IMG/VR virus record: IMGVR_UViG_3300042887_005053
Location: 1-64,000 of that record
Direction: 5' to 3' (one strand)
DNA: 64,000 nt
In this document: positions 4,422-62,285 of the stretch, one piece after another
Position numbering within the stretch: position 1 is the first letter of the stretch
Layout: each line of letters opens with the position of its first letter
Notes under the pieces: model-generated
Told to the model about the DNA's origin: nothing
The model's database searches: none
The model's input: the letters and a program-made list of their open reading frames with translations, nothing else
Made by a program: the position numbers and the translations under genes

Positions 4422-4465
4422 AAAATTATATATTGAGTTAAAGAATAGAGAGATTATCGAAACAA

Positions 4466-4657
4466 TTAATCTGTCAAAAATTCTAACTTTTCTTCACGAA
4501 TAAGTTGAACAATTTCATTATATCTCATTTCAAGACAATCTAAAGTTGTTAAACCTAATTGTATTCTTAGATCAAAGAGTTGATCAGAAGAAATCTTTAA
4601 GTCAACATTTCTATAGAAAATAGAACCTTCAGATAAATATAAGTTTTTAGATTTCAC
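4466..4657 (-). CDS. Small protein with C-terminal tag
   Basis: Ends IREEKLEFLTD. Confidence 0.6.
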   Translation of the reverse strand: MKSKNLYLSEGSIFYRNVDLKISSDQLFDLRIQLGLTTLDCLEMRYNEIVQLIREEKLEFLTD

Positions 4658-4694
4658 TAATTAATATATATGATAAATTAAAATTAGTTTTTTT

Positions 4695-32846: not shown

Positions 32847-32964
32847 ATCTTTTTAAAGTTTTTAGTAATTCTTTTTCAACCCAGTCGTTCATTTTGATAC
32901 CGTTTGTCGCACAAAATATTTTTACTTTTTTGTGGAGGTTTTCTGATATTTTAAGTGTTTTCAT
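32803..32964 (-). CDS. 53-aa ribbon-helix-helix DNA-binding protein (not in ORF track)
   Basis: MKTLKISENLHKKVKIFCATNGIKMNDWVEKELLK; TTTATATATA 4 nt upstream. Confidence 0.7.
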   Translation of the reverse strand: MKTLKISENLHKKVKIFCATNGIKMNDWVEKELLKTLKRYDNNEGIEDQDKSI

Positions 32965-33060
32965 ACAGTATATATAAAAGTTTCTTTTTCTACTTTTACA
33001 CTTTCAAATAGATTACAGGTATGAGATGACACAACGATGAAGAAAGAATTTTATTTAGTT

Positions 33061-38198: not shown

Positions 38199-38307
38199 TT
38201 TGTTATTTCAATAATTTTTCTTATATTTGTATTAAGTAATTGAACTGGAAACAGTTAAAGATTACTTAAAATAAATTTGGAATATTGGAAAGTATTCCTT
38301 ATCTTTG
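38199..38307 (+). promoter_or_regulatory. Tandem early promoters enclosing a GNRA hairpin
   Basis: TTTG-N19-TATATTTG (38199-38229) and TTTG-N20-TATCTTTG (38276-38307). Confidence 0.8.
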
Positions 38308-38980: not shown

Positions 38981-39012
38981 TTTGGAAAATTAAAAATCAT
39001 TACTTATATTTG
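38981..39012 (+). promoter_or_regulatory. Early promoter
   Basis: TTTG-N20-TATATTTG, followed by TAAAACAATAA as at 38308. Confidence 0.8.
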
Positions 39013-41774: not shown

Positions 41775-42641
41775 ATGATAAGTTACATGGGTGCCAAAGG
41801 TGGTGCGATGGGTAAATGGATCGAAGATTTTATTCCAAAAGATATAAAAGTATTTTCTGAACCATTCAGTGGTATGTTTAATGTTTATCTAACTATGGAT
41901 TTAGATAAATATACAAATTTAGAAAAAGTAGTTTACAATGATTTTAATGTTTTAAATGCAAACATATTTGCTTGTGCTAGAAAATATAAAGAGTTCTATA
42001 CATTCTTACAGAATCAAGAATGTCAACAAAAAAGAAACGACGGATCACCAACAGATCCGAAATTCAAAAAATGGTTTGATGAATATCAAAAAGATATATT
42101 TGTAAATCAACCAAAATTAGATATGGATAATCCAGATTATGAAAATGGTGTCAAATATTCATATGTATTATCACAGGTTTTTTCTGGGTCTAAGCCAGAA
42201 ACTAGTTCTTTTATAGATTTAAAAGGTAAGTACAACTGTAAGTTTGATTCATTTAGAAAAAAAATGAATGGTTCTAATCATGGCAAGAGTATATTAAATC
42301 ACTTAGATAAAATTACAAATGTTGAGAGTATGGACTTTGAAGATTTAATGTTAAAATATGATAGTCCAGAAACATATTTTTATTTAGATCCACCATACTA
42401 TAATTGTGAAAAATATTACAGTAATCATGAGTTCGGATTAGAAACACATAAGAGATTGGCAGAGTGTATTAAAAAACTGGAAGCAAAATGGTCATTGTCG
42501 TATTACTATTTTCCAGAGTTAGAGAAATGGTTTCCAAGAGATCAATATAATTGGCAAGAAAAAGAGTTTAATAAGATATCAGGCGCTAAGAAAGGTCAAG
42601 AAACTACAAAAGGCACAGAACTTTTGATTATGAATTATTAA
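41775..42641 (+). CDS. Dam-like (D12 class) adenine methyltransferase
   Basis: YMGAK, EPFSG, YND, YLDPPY, ELLIMNY. Confidence 0.9.
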   Translation: MISYMGAKGGAMGKWIEDFIPKDIKVFSEPFSGMFNVYLTMDLDKYTNLEKVVYNDFNVLNANIFACARKYKEFYTFLQNQECQQKRNDGSPTDPKFKKWFDEYQKDIFVNQPKLDMDNPDYENGVKYSYVLSQVFSGSKPETSSFIDLKGKYNCKFDSFRKKMNGSNHGKSILNHLDKITNVESMDFEDLMLKYDSPETYFYLDPPYYNCEKYYSNHEFGLETHKRLAECIKKLEAKWSLSYYYFPELEKWFPRDQYNWQEKEFNKISGAKKGQETTKGTELLIMNY

Positions 42642-43395: not shown

Positions 43396-43432
43396 TTTGT
43401 TTTTTTGAAATTTTATCCTTATCTTTGTATTT

Positions 43433-43813
43433 ATGAGAGAAACTACCAAAATAGAAGTGGCGCAGAAGTGTTTTAATTGGTGTAAAAAGAAGTTTGGCAG
43501 TCCAATATCAGAAACATCAAAAAAGGATTATCCAAGTCTTATATTAGTACCAGACAGAAGAAGAAAGAGATTATACGGTGAATATTCACCGTCTGAAATA
43601 AAGATTTTTTTGAATGTTTGTCAAACTAAAAAGGATATTGTGTCAACAATAATACACGAATACACTCATTTTCTACAAATGCCAAAAAGTATTAAACCTT
43701 ATCACAAGATTCAAAAAGATTTTGAATATTCTGACAATCCTTTTGAAAAAGAAGCTGTGTTAGCAGAATCAAAATTTACTAAAAAATGTTTAAAACAAAT
43801 TAAGAAAAAATGA
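43433..43813 (+). CDS. Small HExxH metallopeptidase-like early protein
   Basis: IIHEYTHFLQ...NPFEKEA; TTTG-N20-TATCTTTG upstream. Confidence 0.75.
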   Translation: MRETTKIEVAQKCFNWCKKKFGSPISETSKKDYPSLILVPDRRRKRLYGEYSPSEIKIFLNVCQTKKDIVSTIIHEYTHFLQMPKSIKPYHKIQKDFEYSDNPFEKEAVLAESKFTKKCLKQIKKK

Positions 43814-43822
43814 TAAGATTAA

Positions 43823-43962
43823 AAATCAATCGATAGTGTAAAATTTAGTCCTTAGGTGACTGCCATAAAGCACACACTATACGCCCTGGCAATAGAGCAT
43901 ACATCAAGCTTGTATGAGTAGTGTAGTTGAGGTAAAATGGTTAATCCTCAAAAGATTGATTT
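43823..43962 (+). ncRNA. Candidate structured RNA of unknown class
   Basis: Closing stem AAATCAATC/GATTGATTT enclosing several hairpins; relatively GC-rich intergenic region. Confidence 0.55.
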
Positions 43963-43965
43963 AAT

Positions 43966-43993
43966 ACCGATAGTTTAACTATCGGTTTTTTTT
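43966..43993 (+). terminator. Intrinsic terminator
   Basis: ACCGATAGT-TTA-ACTATCGGT plus T run. Confidence 0.9.
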
Positions 43994-44052
43994 ATTTAAA
44001 AATTTGTTTATTCGGAATTTTATAACTATTTTTGTTATCTAAAATAATATCT

Positions 44053-44913
44053 ATGAAAAATTATAAAGACTACAACAAACAAGAAATCTTTAATGTACTT
44101 GATAACATAACAATTGAAAAGGTGGCTAACCAAGTTATCACTAAATACAGAGATACTGTTATTAACATCACAAATGTATCTAATCGATATGAAGTCTTTG
44201 ACATAGTTAAATATTTGAAAAACAAAATTGAACTGATTGAGAAAAACTTTAATATACAAAAATATTCTTTACATCTAACCAGAGGTAAACAATATCTTCA
44301 ACTTATTTCAGACAAAATAGAAGTTGGTGGTGTTGAATTCTACAAGTCATTCTATATTCTAAATTCAACAGACAAGTCAAGACGACTTAGTTTTAATGTT
44401 GGTCTTTACTCAGAGTCTAAAAACTTTTATATAATTAGTGCAAATAACGCTAGTTTAACTAAAAAACATCTAACAGGAGTAACACAAGCTGCTGAAGAAG
44501 CCTCTGAAGGATTAAATGGTGAAACATTCGATCAACAAATCGAATCACTAAACTCACTTGTTGGTCATAACATATTGTTTTCGAATCTACGAAAAGTAAT
44601 ACTTGGTGACAAAGAAGAGATCCCACAAGTTAATCATAGAAAGTTCGACGCATTCAAAAACTCTATTAGATTCGCTAATTCCGATGGTAGAATTTCACTC
44701 ACTAATGAACAAAGAGAGCAACTCTTAGTTGATTCAGAGAAGTTAACATCTGTTACTCACGACTTTTATATCAGTGCATTTTGGGCTTTTCAAGTTTACT
44801 TGAGTTTGTTCAGAAAACAAGACTCACATGTTATTAAAAATGAATCTGAAAGAATTATGAAGATTACACAATGGGCAGTTCGTAATTCAGTGTTAGAAGA
44901 ACTTGGAATCTAA
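44053..44913 (+). CDS. DUF932-like early protein with C-terminal tag (start revised)
   Basis: ILNSTDKSRRLSFNVGLY; TTTG-N20-TATTTTTG upstream; ends VRNSVLEELGI. Confidence 0.55.
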   Translation: MKNYKDYNKQEIFNVLDNITIEKVANQVITKYRDTVINITNVSNRYEVFDIVKYLKNKIELIEKNFNIQKYSLHLTRGKQYLQLISDKIEVGGVEFYKSFYILNSTDKSRRLSFNVGLYSESKNFYIISANNASLTKKHLTGVTQAAEEASEGLNGETFDQQIESLNSLVGHNILFSNLRKVILGDKEEIPQVNHRKFDAFKNSIRFANSDGRISLTNEQREQLLVDSEKLTSVTHDFYISAFWAFQVYLSLFRKQDSHVIKNESERIMKITQWAVRNSVLEELGI

Positions 44914-45585: not shown

Positions 45586-46791
45586 ATGGCATATTCAAGA
45601 AAAACTGGTGATTTATTTATTTCAGAGGAGATCAAGGAAATTTTAGTTCAAATTGAAAAAGAATCAGTAGTGGCAAAAGCTCTTTTGAAGCAAAGACACT
45701 CATTGGATAGCCTTTGTGAAGATTATGTTAATTACATATCAATCTCTGTACAAGATAGATTTCGTATTTCCTATTTAACTCCAGAAAGAATCGAGTCAAT
45801 CCCTGATCAAGAACTTTGGACTTCTTCTAAAAGATTTAATGCAAAAGCTGGTTCAGTCATTAAAAAGATTTTTCCAAATTTCACTGAAAGAGAAATAGAT
45901 AATTTTATAACATTATACAGATCTATTATATCTAAGCCTGACTTCAAATTCAAAGTAGTTAAAGGTGAAGATATTAAAAAGTATTATCATTATTCACAAT
46001 ATTTTGATAATTCTTCATCACTTGGTGCTTCTTGTATGAAGCATGATTCTTGTCAAGATTTTCTAGATATTTACACAGAAAACTCAGATAAAGTTAGTTT
46101 ACTGATAATGGTTAATCCTTCTGATAAAATCTTAGGAAGAGCTTTGCTTTGGAATTTACCAGATATTAAATTGATGGATCGTATATACACAATTGATGAT
46201 AATGATCTTACTTTTCATTTCAAAAAATGGGCACAAGATAATGGATTCTTTTACAAAAAAGAACAAAAATGGAATAACACATTATTCTTTATTCGACCAG
46301 ATGGAAAATCAGTTCAATTGGAATTGTCTGTTGAAATTGAGAATATCAGAAATTTTGAAAGATTCCCTTACTTTGATACCTTCAAATTCTACTCACCATC
46401 GAAAAAACGACTTTATAACTTTATGCCACAATCTGGTTTCGATTATATCTTATCATCACCAGATGGATATAAACAAGAGTCAGATCATTTGGCACAGTGT
46501 TCTAAAAGTAAACTCTTCTATTATAAAGGTGACACTCAATATTTAGATTATCTGAATTCAAGAGTGTTTAGTGGAGACTTACACTTTTCAGATGTAAATG
46601 ATTGTTATATCTATAAAGATGATTGTATTTGGGATGAAGATTTAAGAGATTATATTTTCTCTGACTCAAGTATGAATAATGAAAAGTCTATTCAAAGAAG
46701 AAAAGATTGGTTAGAAAGAAGAAGAAAAGAAAGAGATGAAGAAGAGTCTCGACTAAGAAACTCTTTGTCAGATTATCTTGAATTCAACTGA
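45586..46791 (+). CDS. SCM/GRALLW/MDRIY-family protein, early paralog of 4695-5954
   Basis: LGASCM, GRALLW, LMDRIY, FPYFDT; TATATTTG at 45563-45570. Confidence 0.75.
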   Translation: MAYSRKTGDLFISEEIKEILVQIEKESVVAKALLKQRHSLDSLCEDYVNYISISVQDRFRISYLTPERIESIPDQELWTSSKRFNAKAGSVIKKIFPNFTEREIDNFITLYRSIISKPDFKFKVVKGEDIKKYYHYSQYFDNSSSLGASCMKHDSCQDFLDIYTENSDKVSLLIMVNPSDKILGRALLWNLPDIKLMDRIYTIDDNDLTFHFKKWAQDNGFFYKKEQKWNNTLFFIRPDGKSVQLELSVEIENIRNFERFPYFDTFKFYSPSKKRLYNFMPQSGFDYILSSPDGYKQESDHLAQCSKSKLFYYKGDTQYLDYLNSRVFSGDLHFSDVNDCYIYKDDCIWDEDLRDYIFSDSSMNNEKSIQRRKDWLERRRKERDEEESRLRNSLSDYLEFN

Positions 46792-46826: not shown

Positions 46827-47549
46827 ATGAGGGATTTTGTTTTAGATAAGTTAAAAGCATTTGATGATACAGAATTTAAGTTTGATTCGATCAAACATAA
46901 ATATACCTATGAAGGTGAACATTTTATTTCTGTAACTCAATTTATATCTCGTTTTCACAAAAAATTTGATTCTGATTTTTGGTCTCAAAAAAAGGCTGAA
47001 GAAAGAGGAGTTGATCAACAAGAGATTCTAAATGAATGGAAGTCTCTAAATGATAGAGCTAACTTTATTGGTACATCTACACATAATTGGATTGAAAATT
47101 ATTTTAATCGTATTTATCAAGAATTACCCTCTGACTTAGATGTTATCGACAGAATAAATAAGTTCAATAAGGTTTTTGGAACACATCTATTTAAATTGAC
47201 ACCACTTAAATTTGAACAGCGAATATTTTCTAAAAAGTGGAAGATAGCTGGAATGATTGATTCTTTATTTTTATACAAAGACAAACTAATAATTCTAGAC
47301 TGGAAAACCAACAAAAAGTACGATATCAAAAATAATTATGGTGAAAAACTATTAGAACCATTCAATGATTACGATAAGTGTCATTTAAGTGAATATTCGA
47401 TACAATTATCACTTTATTCTTTGATTCTTAAAGAAATAGATTTAGATGTAAAAGCTTGTTACACAGTTTACATAGGTCCTGATGATGTTAATGTTTACAA
47501 GTGTTATGATTTCACTGAGATATTAAATAATTATTTAATATCTCAGTGA
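46827..47549 (+). CDS. PD-(D/E)xK exonuclease (RecB/Cas4-like superfamily)
   Basis: SVTQ, GTSTH, AGMID, ILDWKT, YSIQLSLY. Confidence 0.85.
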   Translation: MRDFVLDKLKAFDDTEFKFDSIKHKYTYEGEHFISVTQFISRFHKKFDSDFWSQKKAEERGVDQQEILNEWKSLNDRANFIGTSTHNWIENYFNRIYQELPSDLDVIDRINKFNKVFGTHLFKLTPLKFEQRIFSKKWKIAGMIDSLFLYKDKLIILDWKTNKKYDIKNNYGEKLLEPFNDYDKCHLSEYSIQLSLYSLILKEIDLDVKACYTVYIGPDDVNVYKCYDFTEILNNYLISQ

Positions 47550-56419: not shown

Positions 56420-57580
56420 ATGAGCAAACCTTATAAATTAGCACTTTCTCAGATCGTGAAGAACGAAGCACACGTTGTAGAAAGAATGTTAAACACGATT
56501 AAACCCATTATTGATTGTGTTGTTGTAGTTGATACTGGTTCAACTGACGGAACACAAGATGTAATTCGTAAATGGGGAGAAACAAACAATATTGCATGTT
56601 TTGTTTATGATAGACCATTCGATAATTTTGAGAATTCAAGAAATTATGCAATGGAAATGGTAAAAGATAAGTCTGAATATGCTTTTTGGCTTGATGCAGA
56701 TGAAATGCTTGAAATTGACCCTAAGGTTTTTGATAAAAACAAGTTAGACAAAGATCTTTATATGTTCAACACATTCATTGGAAGTATGAAATATACTCGT
56801 AATGAGTGTTGGAAAACTGATAAACCTTTTAGATGGTATGGACCTGTTCATGAATTTATTGTTTGTGATCAACAAAATATCACATCTGGTCTTATGGAAG
56901 GTCTATCTGTAAAAGTATTTATGGATGGTGGTTCTTGGAAAGGAAATATCGCTGATAAATACAAAAAACATTCGGCTATTTTAGAAGATTATATTGACAA
57001 CAAAGACAGAAATGCTCGTTGGGTATTCTATACAGCTCAATCATATCACGATTCTGCTTCACTTCCAGATAATAAAGTTGAAAATGAAGAGAGACTTAGA
57101 AGAGCTTTGAAATACTATAGAGAAAGAGTAGGTCGAAGTGATGGTTATGAAGAAGAAAGATTCTACTCACAGTTTCGTGTTGGAACTATTATGAGAGTAT
57201 TAGAAGAACCTTGGGCTTTAACACATCAAGAGTTGTTAAAAGCTTATACAATGGATCCACTTAGAGCTGAGCCAATTAAAGCTATTGTTGACTATTACTT
57301 GTCAGTAGGTGAATGGAATATGGCATTCTTATACACTAAGTTTGCTAAAGCTAACTTCCATGGTAAAAATCCATATCCTACTAGACTTCTATTTGTTGAT
57401 GAAAGTCTTTACATCTGGAGATTCTTAGAAGTACACGCAGCAGCTTGTTTCTATACTAATAGAAAAGAAGAAGCATCTGCTAACTACAGAGAATTACAAG
57501 ATGTGATCAGAAGAGCACCACAATACTTCACACAAGAAGATATTGCAAAAATCAATTCGAACGCTCAGTTCTTTAAGTAA
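56420..57580 (+). CDS. GT2 glycosyltransferase with TPR-like C-terminus
   Basis: IVKNE, DTGSTDGT, LDADE, GPVHE, FYTAQSY. Confidence 0.88.
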   Translation: MSKPYKLALSQIVKNEAHVVERMLNTIKPIIDCVVVVDTGSTDGTQDVIRKWGETNNIACFVYDRPFDNFENSRNYAMEMVKDKSEYAFWLDADEMLEIDPKVFDKNKLDKDLYMFNTFIGSMKYTRNECWKTDKPFRWYGPVHEFIVCDQQNITSGLMEGLSVKVFMDGGSWKGNIADKYKKHSAILEDYIDNKDRNARWVFYTAQSYHDSASLPDNKVENEERLRRALKYYRERVGRSDGYEEERFYSQFRVGTIMRVLEEPWALTHQELLKAYTMDPLRAEPIKAIVDYYLSVGEWNMAFLYTKFAKANFHGKNPYPTRLLFVDESLYIWRFLEVHAAACFYTNRKEEASANYRELQDVIRRAPQYFTQEDIAKINSNAQFFK

Positions 57581-61718: not shown

Positions 61719-62254
61719 TTTATCAAATCATAGACCCAATCAGCTTCGAATTCTGGATCTGTTATTTTCAAATCGTACTTATTGAAATTATGAAAGTCTA
61801 ACAAATCAGCTTGTAGTCTTCTATCTATTGAGTCGTTATTATCATTTCTTCTGTTTAGTCTACTTCTTCTTATTTCAATATCTATATCTAAATAGACAAC
61901 AAAACACTTCTTCAAATCATCTTCTGTTAGTTGATTTATTTCAAAAGGAGTCATAATAAATAGTTGATTATTGTCGAAATTCTCTTTTGTTATACCATAG
62001 TGCCAAATTTGATCTTTGATATTGAATGTTTGAAAAACTTTTATTAATCCTTCATTGTTTAATTGATCAAAATTTTGATTATCTATGAAGTTGTAGTCTA
62101 TCCCGTCATTTTCAAGTTGTCGTTTTGGACGAGTTGTAAATTTAGGAGAATATCTTAACTCTTTTTTAATTAAACCTCTTAGCAAAAAGTCTTTGCCTGA
62201 TCCAGACGGACCAACTAAAATTGTTTTTTCTTGTTTAGTATTAGGTGCTTTCAA
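61715..62254 (-). CDS. gmk: Guanylate kinase
   Basis: GPSGSGK, TTRPKR.E.DG.DY.F, YG. Confidence 0.88.
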   Translation of the reverse strand: MKAPNTKQEKTILVGPSGSGKDFLLRGLIKKELRYSPKFTTRPKRQLENDGIDYNFIDNQNFDQLNNEGLIKVFQTFNIKDQIWHYGITKENFDNNQLFIMTPFEINQLTEDDLKKCFVVYLDIDIEIRRSRLNRRNDNNDSIDRRLQADLLDFHNFNKYDLKITDPEFEADWVYDLIN

Positions 62255-62285
62255 CTTTTATTATAAATATAATTTTTATTAAAGT

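What the first reader, a model, noticed from the sequence alone, without database searches (positions are those of the whole stretch)
43823..43993. Structured RNA of about 140 nt with competing helices, directly before a terminator
Seen: closing stem 43823-43831/43954-43962. Hairpins AGTC/GACT (43847-43861), CTG-GCAA-TAG with a GNRA loop (43886-43895), CATACA/TGTATG (43898-43916) and TTGAGG/CCTCAA (43927-43951). ACACTAT (43874-43880) can pair with either ATAGTGT (43833-43839) or GTAGTGT (43918-43924), and TGCCA (43861-43865) can pair with TGGCA (43887-43891). It is one of the longest non-coding gaps here and lies in the 3' region of an early transcript. I cannot match it to a riboswitch, ribozyme or tRNA. 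Inference: a phage sRNA, decoy or conformational switch.
Basis: partly seen in the sequence, partly recalled or inferred. Interest (0 to 1): 0.62.

Follow-up and report, generated by a model that had tools for sequence, protein, structure and literature searches.

The report
New structured small RNA of huge phages
The flagged stretch is a real, conserved, roughly 140-base folded non-coding RNA, present once per genome in a group of very large aquatic phages and matching no described RNA family; what it does is still unknown.

Summary
Window 43823-43962 (+) folds into a four-way junction, followed by an intrinsic terminator at 43966-43993.

I found 19 distinct homologues in huge-phage contigs and metagenomes, one copy per genome. 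56 of 131 alignment columns are invariant.

Compensatory base changes support:
- the closing stem P1, which has at least 7 different sequence versions
- hairpin P2a
- helix P3 (ACACTAT/GTAGTGT)
- hairpin P3b (CATACA/TGTATG)

On the model-fitted alignment, 92.7% of cells are paired and the covariation score is 0.265, against 0.135 for shuffles (0 of 500 reach it).

TGCCA/TGGCA does not hold in relatives. The GNRA loop is not conserved. The competing helix ATAGTGT:ACACTAT stays pairable but shows no compensatory change.

There is no Rfam, tRNA or conserved-ORF match. In one clade the RNA follows a divergent gene. In one genome it is followed only by a convergent gene. It is therefore a stand-alone RNA gene, not a leader or a 3'-UTR device.

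The function is inferred only. Most likely it is a trans-acting RNA that binds a protein or a ligand. No usable expression data exist.

The parts
43396..43427 (+). Bacteroidota-type promoter (TTTG-N-TATCTTTG) of the unit that carries the upstream ORF and the RNA
   Evidence: the pattern occurs 15 times in the window against 6.5 expected, and 0 of 100 shuffles reach 15. This site lies 6 nt before the ORF start.
43433..43813 (+). Upstream 126-aa ORF, weakly metallopeptidase-like (DUF6782). It ends in TGA TAA, 9 nt before P1
   Evidence: The homologue in L010 is separated from the RNA by an inserted 627-aa SPFH-domain gene.
43823..43831 (+). P1, 5' strand (AAAUCAAUC) of the closing stem
   Evidence: Own-partner duplex is -9.6 kcal/mol against a mean of -2.1 for partners from other clades. 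Other clades carry different complementary sequences.
43833..43839 (+). 5' segment AUAGUGU. GUGU 43836-39 is the P2 5' strand, and the whole segment is also complementary to the P3 5' strand
   Evidence: GUGU is invariant in all members.
43847..43861 (+). P2a hairpin AGUC-CUUAGGU-GACU
   Evidence: pair types CG 9 / UA 8 / UG 1 at one pair and UA 16 / CG 1 / UG 1 at another. 100% of cells are paired.
43862..43866 (+). Pseudoknot 5' strand GCCAU, on the 3' side of the internal loop of arm 2
   Evidence: CCA here pairs with UGG in the P4 loop. Most relatives have CGG with CCG instead.
43870..43873 (+). P2 3' strand GCAC
   Evidence: It is invariant, so pairing with GUGU is predicted but cannot be tested by covariation.
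43874..43880 (+). P3 5' strand ACACUAU
   Evidence: Changes at positions 2, 4, 6 and 7 are compensated in 43918-24.
43884..43896 (+).
   Evidence: It is identical in all members except the loop letter (A or U) and clade C, which has CUCUGGCUUAUAGA.
43898..43916 (+). P3b hairpin CAUACA-UCAAGCU-UGUAUG with a conserved 7-nt loop UCANGCU
   Evidence: pair types CG/GC/UA, AU/UA/CG/GC and UA/CG at the three outer pairs. 100% of cells are paired.
43918..43924 (+). P3 3' strand GUAGUGU
43927..43951 (+). P4 hairpin UUGAGG / CCUCAA with a 13-nt loop. Loop bases AUGGU 43937-41 form the pseudoknot 3' strand
   Evidence: The stem is invariant apart from U-A becoming U-G in two members.
43954..43962 (+). 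P1, 3' strand (GAUUGAUUU)
43966..43993 (+). Intrinsic terminator: 9-bp stem ACCGAUAGU/ACUAUCGGU, 3-nt loop, then U8
   Evidence: Every family member has a stem-plus-U-run terminator 5-40 nt after P1, with different sequences.
44003..44034 (+). Separate Bacteroidota-type promoter of the downstream gene
44053..44913 (+). Downstream 286-aa DUF932-like gene. It is a syntenic neighbour of the RNA in the window clade and in clade B, but not elsewhere

Best explanation
Window 43823-43962 encodes a member of a previously undescribed family of small structured RNAs of huge phages. The phages are AT-rich, roughly half a megabase in size, and probably infect Bacteroidota.

The fold: the RNA is read from the + strand and ends at the intrinsic terminator 43966-43993. 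Closing stem P1 holds three arms: P2 with P2a, P3 with P3b, and P4. A Watson-Crick pseudoknot joins the internal loop of arm 2 to the loop of arm 4.

Transcription: in this window it is made as the tail of the transcript that starts at the promoter at 43396-43427. In other family members it has its own upstream region.

Function (inferred): because it works in any genomic context, it most likely acts in trans as a stable, compactly folded RNA. Its invariant loops, junctions and stems would be read by a specific partner, a phage or host protein or possibly a small ligand. It is unlikely to regulate a neighbouring gene.

Shown here: the family, the fold, the strand, the terminator and the independence from context. 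Inferred only: that it accumulates as a discrete RNA, and what it binds.

The confidence of 0.55 is for the whole statement, including the trans-acting reading. For the narrower claim that this is a real, conserved, structured non-coding RNA family, I put it at about 0.93.
For: Family:
- 19 distinct sequences come from IMG/VR huge-phage records and metagenome contigs.
- There is one copy in each of G000, G001 (476 kb), G011, G012 (465 kb), G013, G014, G015 and G016.
- 56 of 131 columns are invariant. Core identity is 67-69% between clades whose adjacent protein is only 46% identical.

Fold:
- 92.7% of cells are paired and 9 pairs change on both sides.
- The covariation score is 0.265 against 0.135 for shuffles (0 of 500 reach it) and at most 0.088 for slid partners.
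- RNAalifold on the unfitted MAFFT alignment recovers P2, P2a, P3b and P4.
- P3, the pseudoknot and P1 are supported by compensatory changes and by own-versus-foreign partner energies.

Strand:
- About 34 G-U cells against 1 C-A cell.
- All terminators lie downstream on the same strand.

Not coding: no frame is open in all members, and the window has at least 2 stops in all six frames.

Context independence:
- Clade B follows a divergently transcribed gene.
- The G001 copy is followed by a terminator and a convergent HU gene.
- Upstream genes differ: 126-aa, 627-aa SPFH, 171-aa and 65-aa.
- The downstream gene has its own promoter.

Not a known family.
Against: - There is no expression evidence. 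The only run found holds two 151-nt contigs and is probably DNA.
- No partner has been identified, and the neighbouring genes give no functional hint.
- The alignment represents only about five clades, so the number of independent compensatory events is modest.
- P2 and P4 never vary and rest on prediction alone.
- P1 is weak in the clade of L010/L031. In clade A2 (L020, L023 and relatives) it is only 4-6 bp and overlaps the core.
- In the window itself no promoter is seen directly upstream, so here the RNA would be a 3' UTR unless it is processed.
- Related near-complete genomes G003 and G004, and the 635-642 kb phages LR745206 and LR756502, lack it. It is therefore dispensable.
Confidence: 0.55

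Rival explanations
1. Self-cleaving ribozyme or RNA-processing module. The conserved junction would be an active site that cuts the transcript and frees the RNA, or the upstream mRNA, from its neighbours.
For: Size, a variable closing stem, a pseudoknot, many invariant junction nucleotides, stems conserved in sequence, and scattered intergenic positions in phage genomes all fit small ribozymes. In four clades it starts 0-20 nt after a stop codon, where processing would be useful.
Against: No match to any ribozyme model in Rfam, even at E up to 10. A terminator follows within 5-40 nt, so cleavage is not needed to make a 3' end. There are no read-end data. Nothing identifies a cleavage site.
Confidence: 0.12
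2. Riboswitch or attenuator. The fold would be an aptamer, and the terminator at 43966-43993 its expression platform controlling the downstream DUF932-like gene. The two helices that compete for ACACTAT would be the switch.
For: The order aptamer-like fold, terminator, gene is kept upstream of the same DUF932-like gene cluster in the window clade and in distant clade B. The 5' segment stays complementary to the P3 5' strand in all members, 5-7 of 7 pairs. In the window, L010 and L031 the 5' segment resembles the terminator's 5' arm.
Against: The downstream gene has its own promoter after the terminator in both clades. In clades A2, C and L010/L031 the downstream genes are unrelated, and in G001 and L036 there is only a convergent gene. 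The likeness to the terminator arm is absent in the window's closest relative L037 and in clade B. No compensatory change supports the alternative helix.
Confidence: 0.1
3. Cis-acting 3'-UTR element that protects the upstream mRNA from 3' exonucleases or sets its decay.
For: In the window and in clades A2 and L010/L031 it lies directly after an ORF, within the same transcription unit.
Against: Clade B and L064 have no upstream ORF on that strand. A plain terminator hairpin already protects 3' ends. An invariant 125-nt core with a pseudoknot is far more than such a role needs. The upstream genes are unrelated to each other.
Confidence: 0.08
4. Not an RNA at all: a DNA-level site (origin, packaging or recombination site), a missed small protein, or chance structure.
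For: The minus strand also folds well, with z = -4.5. A few members have an open minus-strand frame of 47-49 codons.
Against: G-U pairs are common and would be A-C mismatches on the other strand. No frame is open in all members. Compensatory changes occur in five helices. A same-strand terminator follows in every member.
Confidence: 0.03

Closest known systems
Candidate structured RNAs of viruses and phages predicted from IMG/VR (Fremin, Bhatt and Kyrpides 2023, PMC10690425)
   Same: Same data source (IMG/VR intergenic regions) and same kind of evidence (conservation plus covariation). This motif may be among their 10,006 candidates.
   Different: Their lists are not held here, so identity could not be checked. 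The paper's text describes tRNA-like, terminator and gp20/gp32 leader classes, not this fold.
tRNA and tRNA-like modules (for example the tRNA-like domain of bacterial Y RNAs such as YrlA)
   Same: A closing stem with three arms, a 4-bp second stem, a 7-nt loop on the third arm, a 5-6-bp fourth stem, and a loop-loop contact between arm 2 and arm 4 that recalls the D-loop/T-loop contact.
   Different: ARAGORN finds nothing and there is no Rfam tRNA or Y RNA match. It lacks the T-loop consensus, U33, a purine at 37 and a CCA end. The arms are much longer and the core is about 125 nt. No tRNA genes lie nearby.
Riboswitch aptamers with terminator expression platforms
   Same: A compact multi-helix fold with a pseudoknot and invariant junction nucleotides, followed by an intrinsic terminator.
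   Different: No conserved regulated gene. A promoter lies between the terminator and the next gene. There is no conserved antiterminator. No Rfam riboswitch match.
Small self-cleaving ribozymes found in phage genomes (hammerhead, twister, pistol, hatchet, HDV-like)
   Same: Size range, a variable closing stem, a pseudoknot, and scattered intergenic positions.
   Different: No sequence or structure match to any of these models. Cleavage was not tested.
3'-UTR-derived and phage-encoded base-pairing sRNAs of enterobacteria and their phages (for example CpxQ, DicF), and the T4 stable RNAs C and D (recalled from memory)
   Same: Position at the end of an mRNA with a shared terminator. A phage-encoded stable RNA of unknown role.
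   Different: Base-pairing sRNAs have simple structures and a conserved single-stranded seed. Here the whole 125-nt core is conserved and tightly folded. No homology was found.

Membership tests
Any Rfam 15 family (4227 models) | Score at or above the family's gathering threshold | tested here: not met
   no match in the whole window; at E up to 10 there are only terminator-driven chance matches (best 22.4 bits against a threshold of 55); the same for six other family members.
tRNA / tmRNA | Cloverleaf with canonical arm sizes and conserved D- and T-loop nucleotides (ARAGORN) | tested here: not met
   Searches (window; 11 related loci): 0 genes.
Riboswitch (as a kind) | Lies in the 5' leader of a consistent set of regulated genes | tested here: not met
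   the downstream genes are the DUF932-like cluster in two clades, unrelated genes in others, and none (a convergent HU gene) in G001; the downstream gene has its own promoter.
Riboswitch (as a kind) | Conserved, mutually exclusive pairing between aptamer and terminator | tested here: not met
   the likeness between the 5' segment and the terminator arm is seen only in the window, L010 and L031. It is absent in L037 and clade B.
Riboswitch (as a kind) | Binds a ligand, with a structural change | not testable with these tools
   Needs in-line probing or ITC.
Self-cleaving ribozyme (as a kind) | Site-specific self-cleavage | not testable with these tools
   No raw RNA reads are available. Needs an in vitro assay.
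Structured non-coding RNA gene (generic) | Conserved secondary structure supported by compensatory changes beyond controls | tested here: met
   covariation 0.265 against 0.135 for shuffles (0 of 500), and at most 0.088 for slid partners. Searches cover P3, the pseudoknot and P1.
Structured non-coding RNA gene (generic) | No conserved reading frame | tested here: met
Structured non-coding RNA gene (generic) | A discrete transcript is detected | tested here: inconclusive
   one run, contigs only, probably DNA.

The most novel reading that the evidence does not exclude
This is the first member of a new functional class of phage RNA. It could be a ligand-sensing or catalytic RNA. It could also be a tRNA-shaped decoy that huge phages of Bacteroidota make early in infection to occupy a host enzyme or defence protein. 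Its invariant CCCUGGCNAUAGA block, UCANGCU loop and UGAGG/CCUCA stem would form the recognition or active site.
Probability: 0.2. Interest if true: 0.85.

Novelty: new variant of a known kind. Interest (0 to 1): 0.6.

Why it matters
Huge phages carry much unexplained non-coding sequence. RNAs with this much invariant sequence, a multi-way junction and a covarying pseudoknot are usually riboswitches, ribozymes or cores of RNA-protein machines. This family is small and single-copy, and it comes with a clear covariation-supported model. That makes it a ready target for structure probing, ligand and cleavage screens and pull-downs. Presence in some half-megabase phages and absence in close relatives offers a natural comparison for finding its partner.

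Tried and rejected
- Rfam at the gathering threshold and at permissive E-values, on the window and six relatives: nothing apart from terminator look-alikes.
- ARAGORN: nothing.
- BLAST of the core against 50,697 GenBank phage records: no match. A model search of the 642-kb and 635-kb phages that share the neighbouring gene: no match.
- Pattern scan of 185,579 species genomes: four hits, all chance matches in GC-rich or coding DNA, none confirmed by the model. Three metagenome hits (L033, L043, L047) and one viral hit (L062) were likewise chance.
- The weak model hits at window 57270-57364 (16.9 bits, E 0.3) and at G001:201292-201373 (16.6 bits) are taken as chance.
- Terminator/antiterminator design: not conserved.
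- Neighbour annotation with Pfam, PHROGs and the Atlas gave no RNA-related function.
- Sequencing runs: one run, two 151-nt contigs, probably DNA, so nothing on expression.
- Literature search by sequence words: no paper.
- My last viral pattern scan had one N too many and so found nothing. It says nothing about the family.
- MAFFT and the model-fitted alignment both place the P3 3' strand of clade A2 one column off. They also misplace the pseudoknot strand of the window clade. P3, the pseudoknot and P1 were therefore scored on a hand-anchored segmentation in scripts. The register chosen per clade is my choice.
- A phyletic-profile search for a partner protein was considered and dropped. Only two complete genomes carry the RNA and effectively one complete relative lacks it.

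Full report
**What the window is.** The window is the first 64 kb of a 204-kb IMG/VR virus record that CheckV rates 35% complete. The full genome would therefore be roughly half a megabase. It is AT-rich, and GC rises to 0.43 over the element against 0.17-0.30 around it. Genes are preceded by the Bacteroidota promoter pattern TTTG-N17-23-TAnnTTTG, which occurs 15 times against 6.5 expected (0 of 100 shuffles reach 15). The only GenBank phages with DNA similarity nearby are two uncultured phages of 642 and 635 kb, and the similarity covers the downstream gene only.

**The local unit.** The parts lie in this order:
- A promoter at 43396-43427.
- A 126-aa ORF at 43433-43813, weakly metallopeptidase-like.
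- The element at 43823-43962.
- The only terminator-like site of the region: stem 43966-43986 plus a T run.
- A second promoter at 44003-44034, serving a 286-aa DUF932-like gene at 44053-44913.

The non-coding gap 43814-44052 is the fourth largest in the window.

**Checking the observation.** The minimum-free-energy fold of 43815-43995 uses them: P1, GUGU/GCAC, AGUC/GACU, ACACUAU/GUAGUGU, CAUACA/UGUAUG, UUGAGG/CCUCAA and the terminator. Its energy is -43.3 kcal/mol against -31.0 +/- 4.0 for shuffles, giving z = -3.1. The opposite strand folds about as well, so folding energy alone does not identify the strand.

**Relatives.** I found the first homologue in L010, then used protein-anchored loci, BLAST and five sequence patterns drawn from conserved blocks. 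Together these gave 19 distinct sequences. They come from IMG/VR records of 15-476 kb and from metagenome contigs.

A covariance model of the 125-nt core scores the true members at 90-145 bits. It finds exactly one copy in each of eight virus records, including near-complete genomes of 476 and 465 kb. It finds none in these records:
- G003 (483 kb, 98% complete) and G004, both related near-complete genomes
- G002 and G008
- the 642-kb and 635-kb phages LR756502 and LR745206

A pattern scan of one genome for each of 185,579 prokaryote species gave only chance hits. The family is so far confined to huge phages.

**Conservation.** 56 of 131 alignment columns are invariant in 18 sequences. The window's core is 67-69% identical to clade B over its whole length. 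The adjacent protein, by contrast, is 46% identical, and its DNA aligns only in patches. No reading frame is open in all members, and the window has at least two stops in every frame.

**Structure from comparison, tool-based.** On the model-fitted alignment:
- 92.7% of cells form standard pairs.
- 9 of 25 pairs change on both sides.
- The covariation score is 0.265, against 0.135 +/- 0.013 for shuffled partners (0 of 500 reach it).
- Partners slid by 1-3 columns score at most 0.088.

RNAalifold on the plain MAFFT alignment independently returns P2, P2a, P3b and P4.

**Structure, helix by helix**:
- P2a, AGUC/GACU: becomes AGUU/AACU in clade B and AGCU/GGCU in clade C.
- P3b, CAUACA/UGUAUG: becomes GAUACA/UGUAUC, CCUACA/UGUAGG, CUCACA/UGUGAG, CUUACA/UGUAAG and UGUACA/UGUACA.
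- P3, ACACUAU/GUAGUGU: shows C-G, U-A and G-C at position 2, C-G and A-U at position 4, A-U and G-C at position 6, and U-G, C-G and U-A at position 7.
- P2 (GUGU/GCAC) and P4 (UGAGG/CCUCA): never vary, apart from one U-A to U-G change. They are predictions only.

**P1.** The closing stem has a different, self-complementary sequence in almost every lineage:
- window: AAAUCAAUC/GAUUGAUUU
- L025: AAUUAG/CUAAUU
- L026: GUCAUAAGAA/UUCUGAUGAC
- L027: GUCAAAUGA/UCAGUUGAC
- L064: UCGAUUGAA/UUCAAUUGA
- L065: AAUCUUG/CAAGAUU
- L010: AAAAGU/ACUUUU

Own-partner duplexes are -8 to -10 kcal/mol, against about -2 to -4 for partners from other clades. P1 is weak in L031. In clade A2 it is reduced to UUAGUGU/ACACAAA and overlaps the core.

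The bases after P2a pair with the middle of the P4 loop.
- In most members this is (A)CGG(U) with (A)CCG(U).
- In the window it is GCCAU (43862-66) with AUGGU (43937-41), so two adjacent pairs changed on both sides.
- L037 and clade C have the same CC/GG type.
- Own pairings are favourable. Pairings that mix the two types are not: -3.2 against +0.8, and -5.4 against -1.9 kcal/mol.

TGGCA lies inside the invariant block CCCUGGCNAUAGA and does not follow the changes of its proposed partner.

**The competing helix.** ACACUAU is indeed complementary both to GUAGUGU (P3) and to the 5' segment AUAGUGU. The second complementarity persists in all members at 5-7 of 7 pairs. However, each change in ACACUAU is matched by a change in the P3 partner. 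The 5' segment merely tolerates it through G-U wobbles, or loses the pair (G-G in clade B, A-C in L010 and L031). The alternative fold cannot be excluded, but it has no positive evolutionary support.

**Strand and ends.** About 34 cells are G-U pairs, which would be A-C mismatches on the other strand, against one C-A cell. Every member is followed, 5-40 nt after P1, by a stem-loop and U run of unrelated sequence on the same strand. The RNA is therefore read from the + strand and ends at the terminator.

**Context.**
- In the window, L037, clade B and L064 the RNA sits upstream of the same cluster: a DUF932-like gene, then a protein of about 400 aa, then one of about 240 aa. That gene has its own promoter.
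- In clade B and L064 the gene upstream of the RNA is divergent, so the RNA must be transcribed on its own. A conserved TATAAT or TATAAC box lies about 5 nt before P1.
- In L010 a 627-aa SPFH-domain gene lies between the metallopeptidase-like gene and the RNA.
- In G001 the DUF932-like homologue lies near record position 397 kb and the RNA near 444.7 kb, about 47 kb apart. There the RNA follows a 171-aa ORF and is followed by a terminator and a convergent HU gene.
- Clade A2 members L023, L028 and L039 follow a 65-aa ORF and precede unrelated genes.
- No tRNA genes lie nearby.

This scatter argues against a leader or a 3'-UTR function, and for a self-contained RNA gene.

**What it is like.** The fold is a closing stem with three arms and a contact between arm 2 and the loop of arm 4. 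That is a cloverleaf-like plan, but the sizes and conserved nucleotides are not those of tRNA. It matches none of the 4227 Rfam models, even at permissive thresholds, in the window or in six relatives. No paper in the library holds its conserved words. A 2023 survey predicted 10,006 candidate structured RNAs from IMG/VR (PMC10690425). Its lists are not held here, so I cannot say whether this motif is among them.

**Expression.** Expression could not be assessed. One 'aquatic metagenome' run holds two read-length contigs, at 43860-44010 and 44050-44200, and is probably DNA.

**Verdict.** The stretch is a real, new family of structured small RNA of huge phages, with a well-supported secondary structure and pseudoknot.

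The mechanism is inferred. I favour a trans-acting RNA recognised by a specific protein or ligand. That reading rests on three things: the many invariant nucleotides, including whole stems that do not covary, the single copy, and the independence from context. The main alternatives are a ribozyme (about 0.12), a riboswitch or attenuator (about 0.10) and a 3'-UTR stabiliser (about 0.08).

Noticed in passing
window 61955-62285, 4422-4694, 32847-33060: Three other non-coding gaps of 214-331 nt, comparable to or larger than the one studied. They could hold further RNA genes or regulatory regions.
   Followed up: no
window, 15 sites, for example 38199-38229, 38276-38307, 38981-39012, 43396-43427, 44003-44034: The Bacteroidota-type promoter pattern TTTG-N17-23-TAnnTTTG is enriched (15 against 6.5 expected) and sits just before ORF starts. 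This suggests a Bacteroidota host and host-polymerase (early) transcription of this block.
   Followed up: partly
window 41775-42641 (+): D12-class N6-adenine DNA methyltransferase (Pfam E 3.7e-11; PHROG 56).
   Followed up: no
window 44053-44913, 45586-46791, 46827-47549 (+): A DUF932-like protein, a 401-aa protein and a 240-aa protein keep their order in distant huge phages (45-54% identity to G012 and G013). The 401-aa protein has a paralogue that is divergently transcribed on the other side of the RNA in clade B.
   Followed up: partly
L010:1214-3097: A 627-aa SPFH/Band 7 domain protein lies between the metallopeptidase-like gene and the RNA in one relative and is absent at that place in the window. 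This is an insertion or deletion exactly at the RNA's 5' border.
   Followed up: partly
L059:5573-5845 (G001): A phage-encoded HU-type DNA-binding protein (Pfam E 1.4e-33), convergent with the RNA. Two back-to-back terminators lie between them.
   Followed up: no
L025-L029, L038, L040, L044, L064: the 25 nt before P1: A conserved TATAAT or TATAAC box followed by CTTTG, CACCG or TCTTG and then the P1 strand starting GUC. It is neither a canonical TAnnTTTG motif nor a full sigma-70 promoter, and may be a phage-specific promoter.
   Followed up: partly
window 43964-43965: The single sequencing run that holds this stretch reads GA instead of AT in the linker between P1 and the terminator. This is strain variation in an unpaired spacer.
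   Followed up: no
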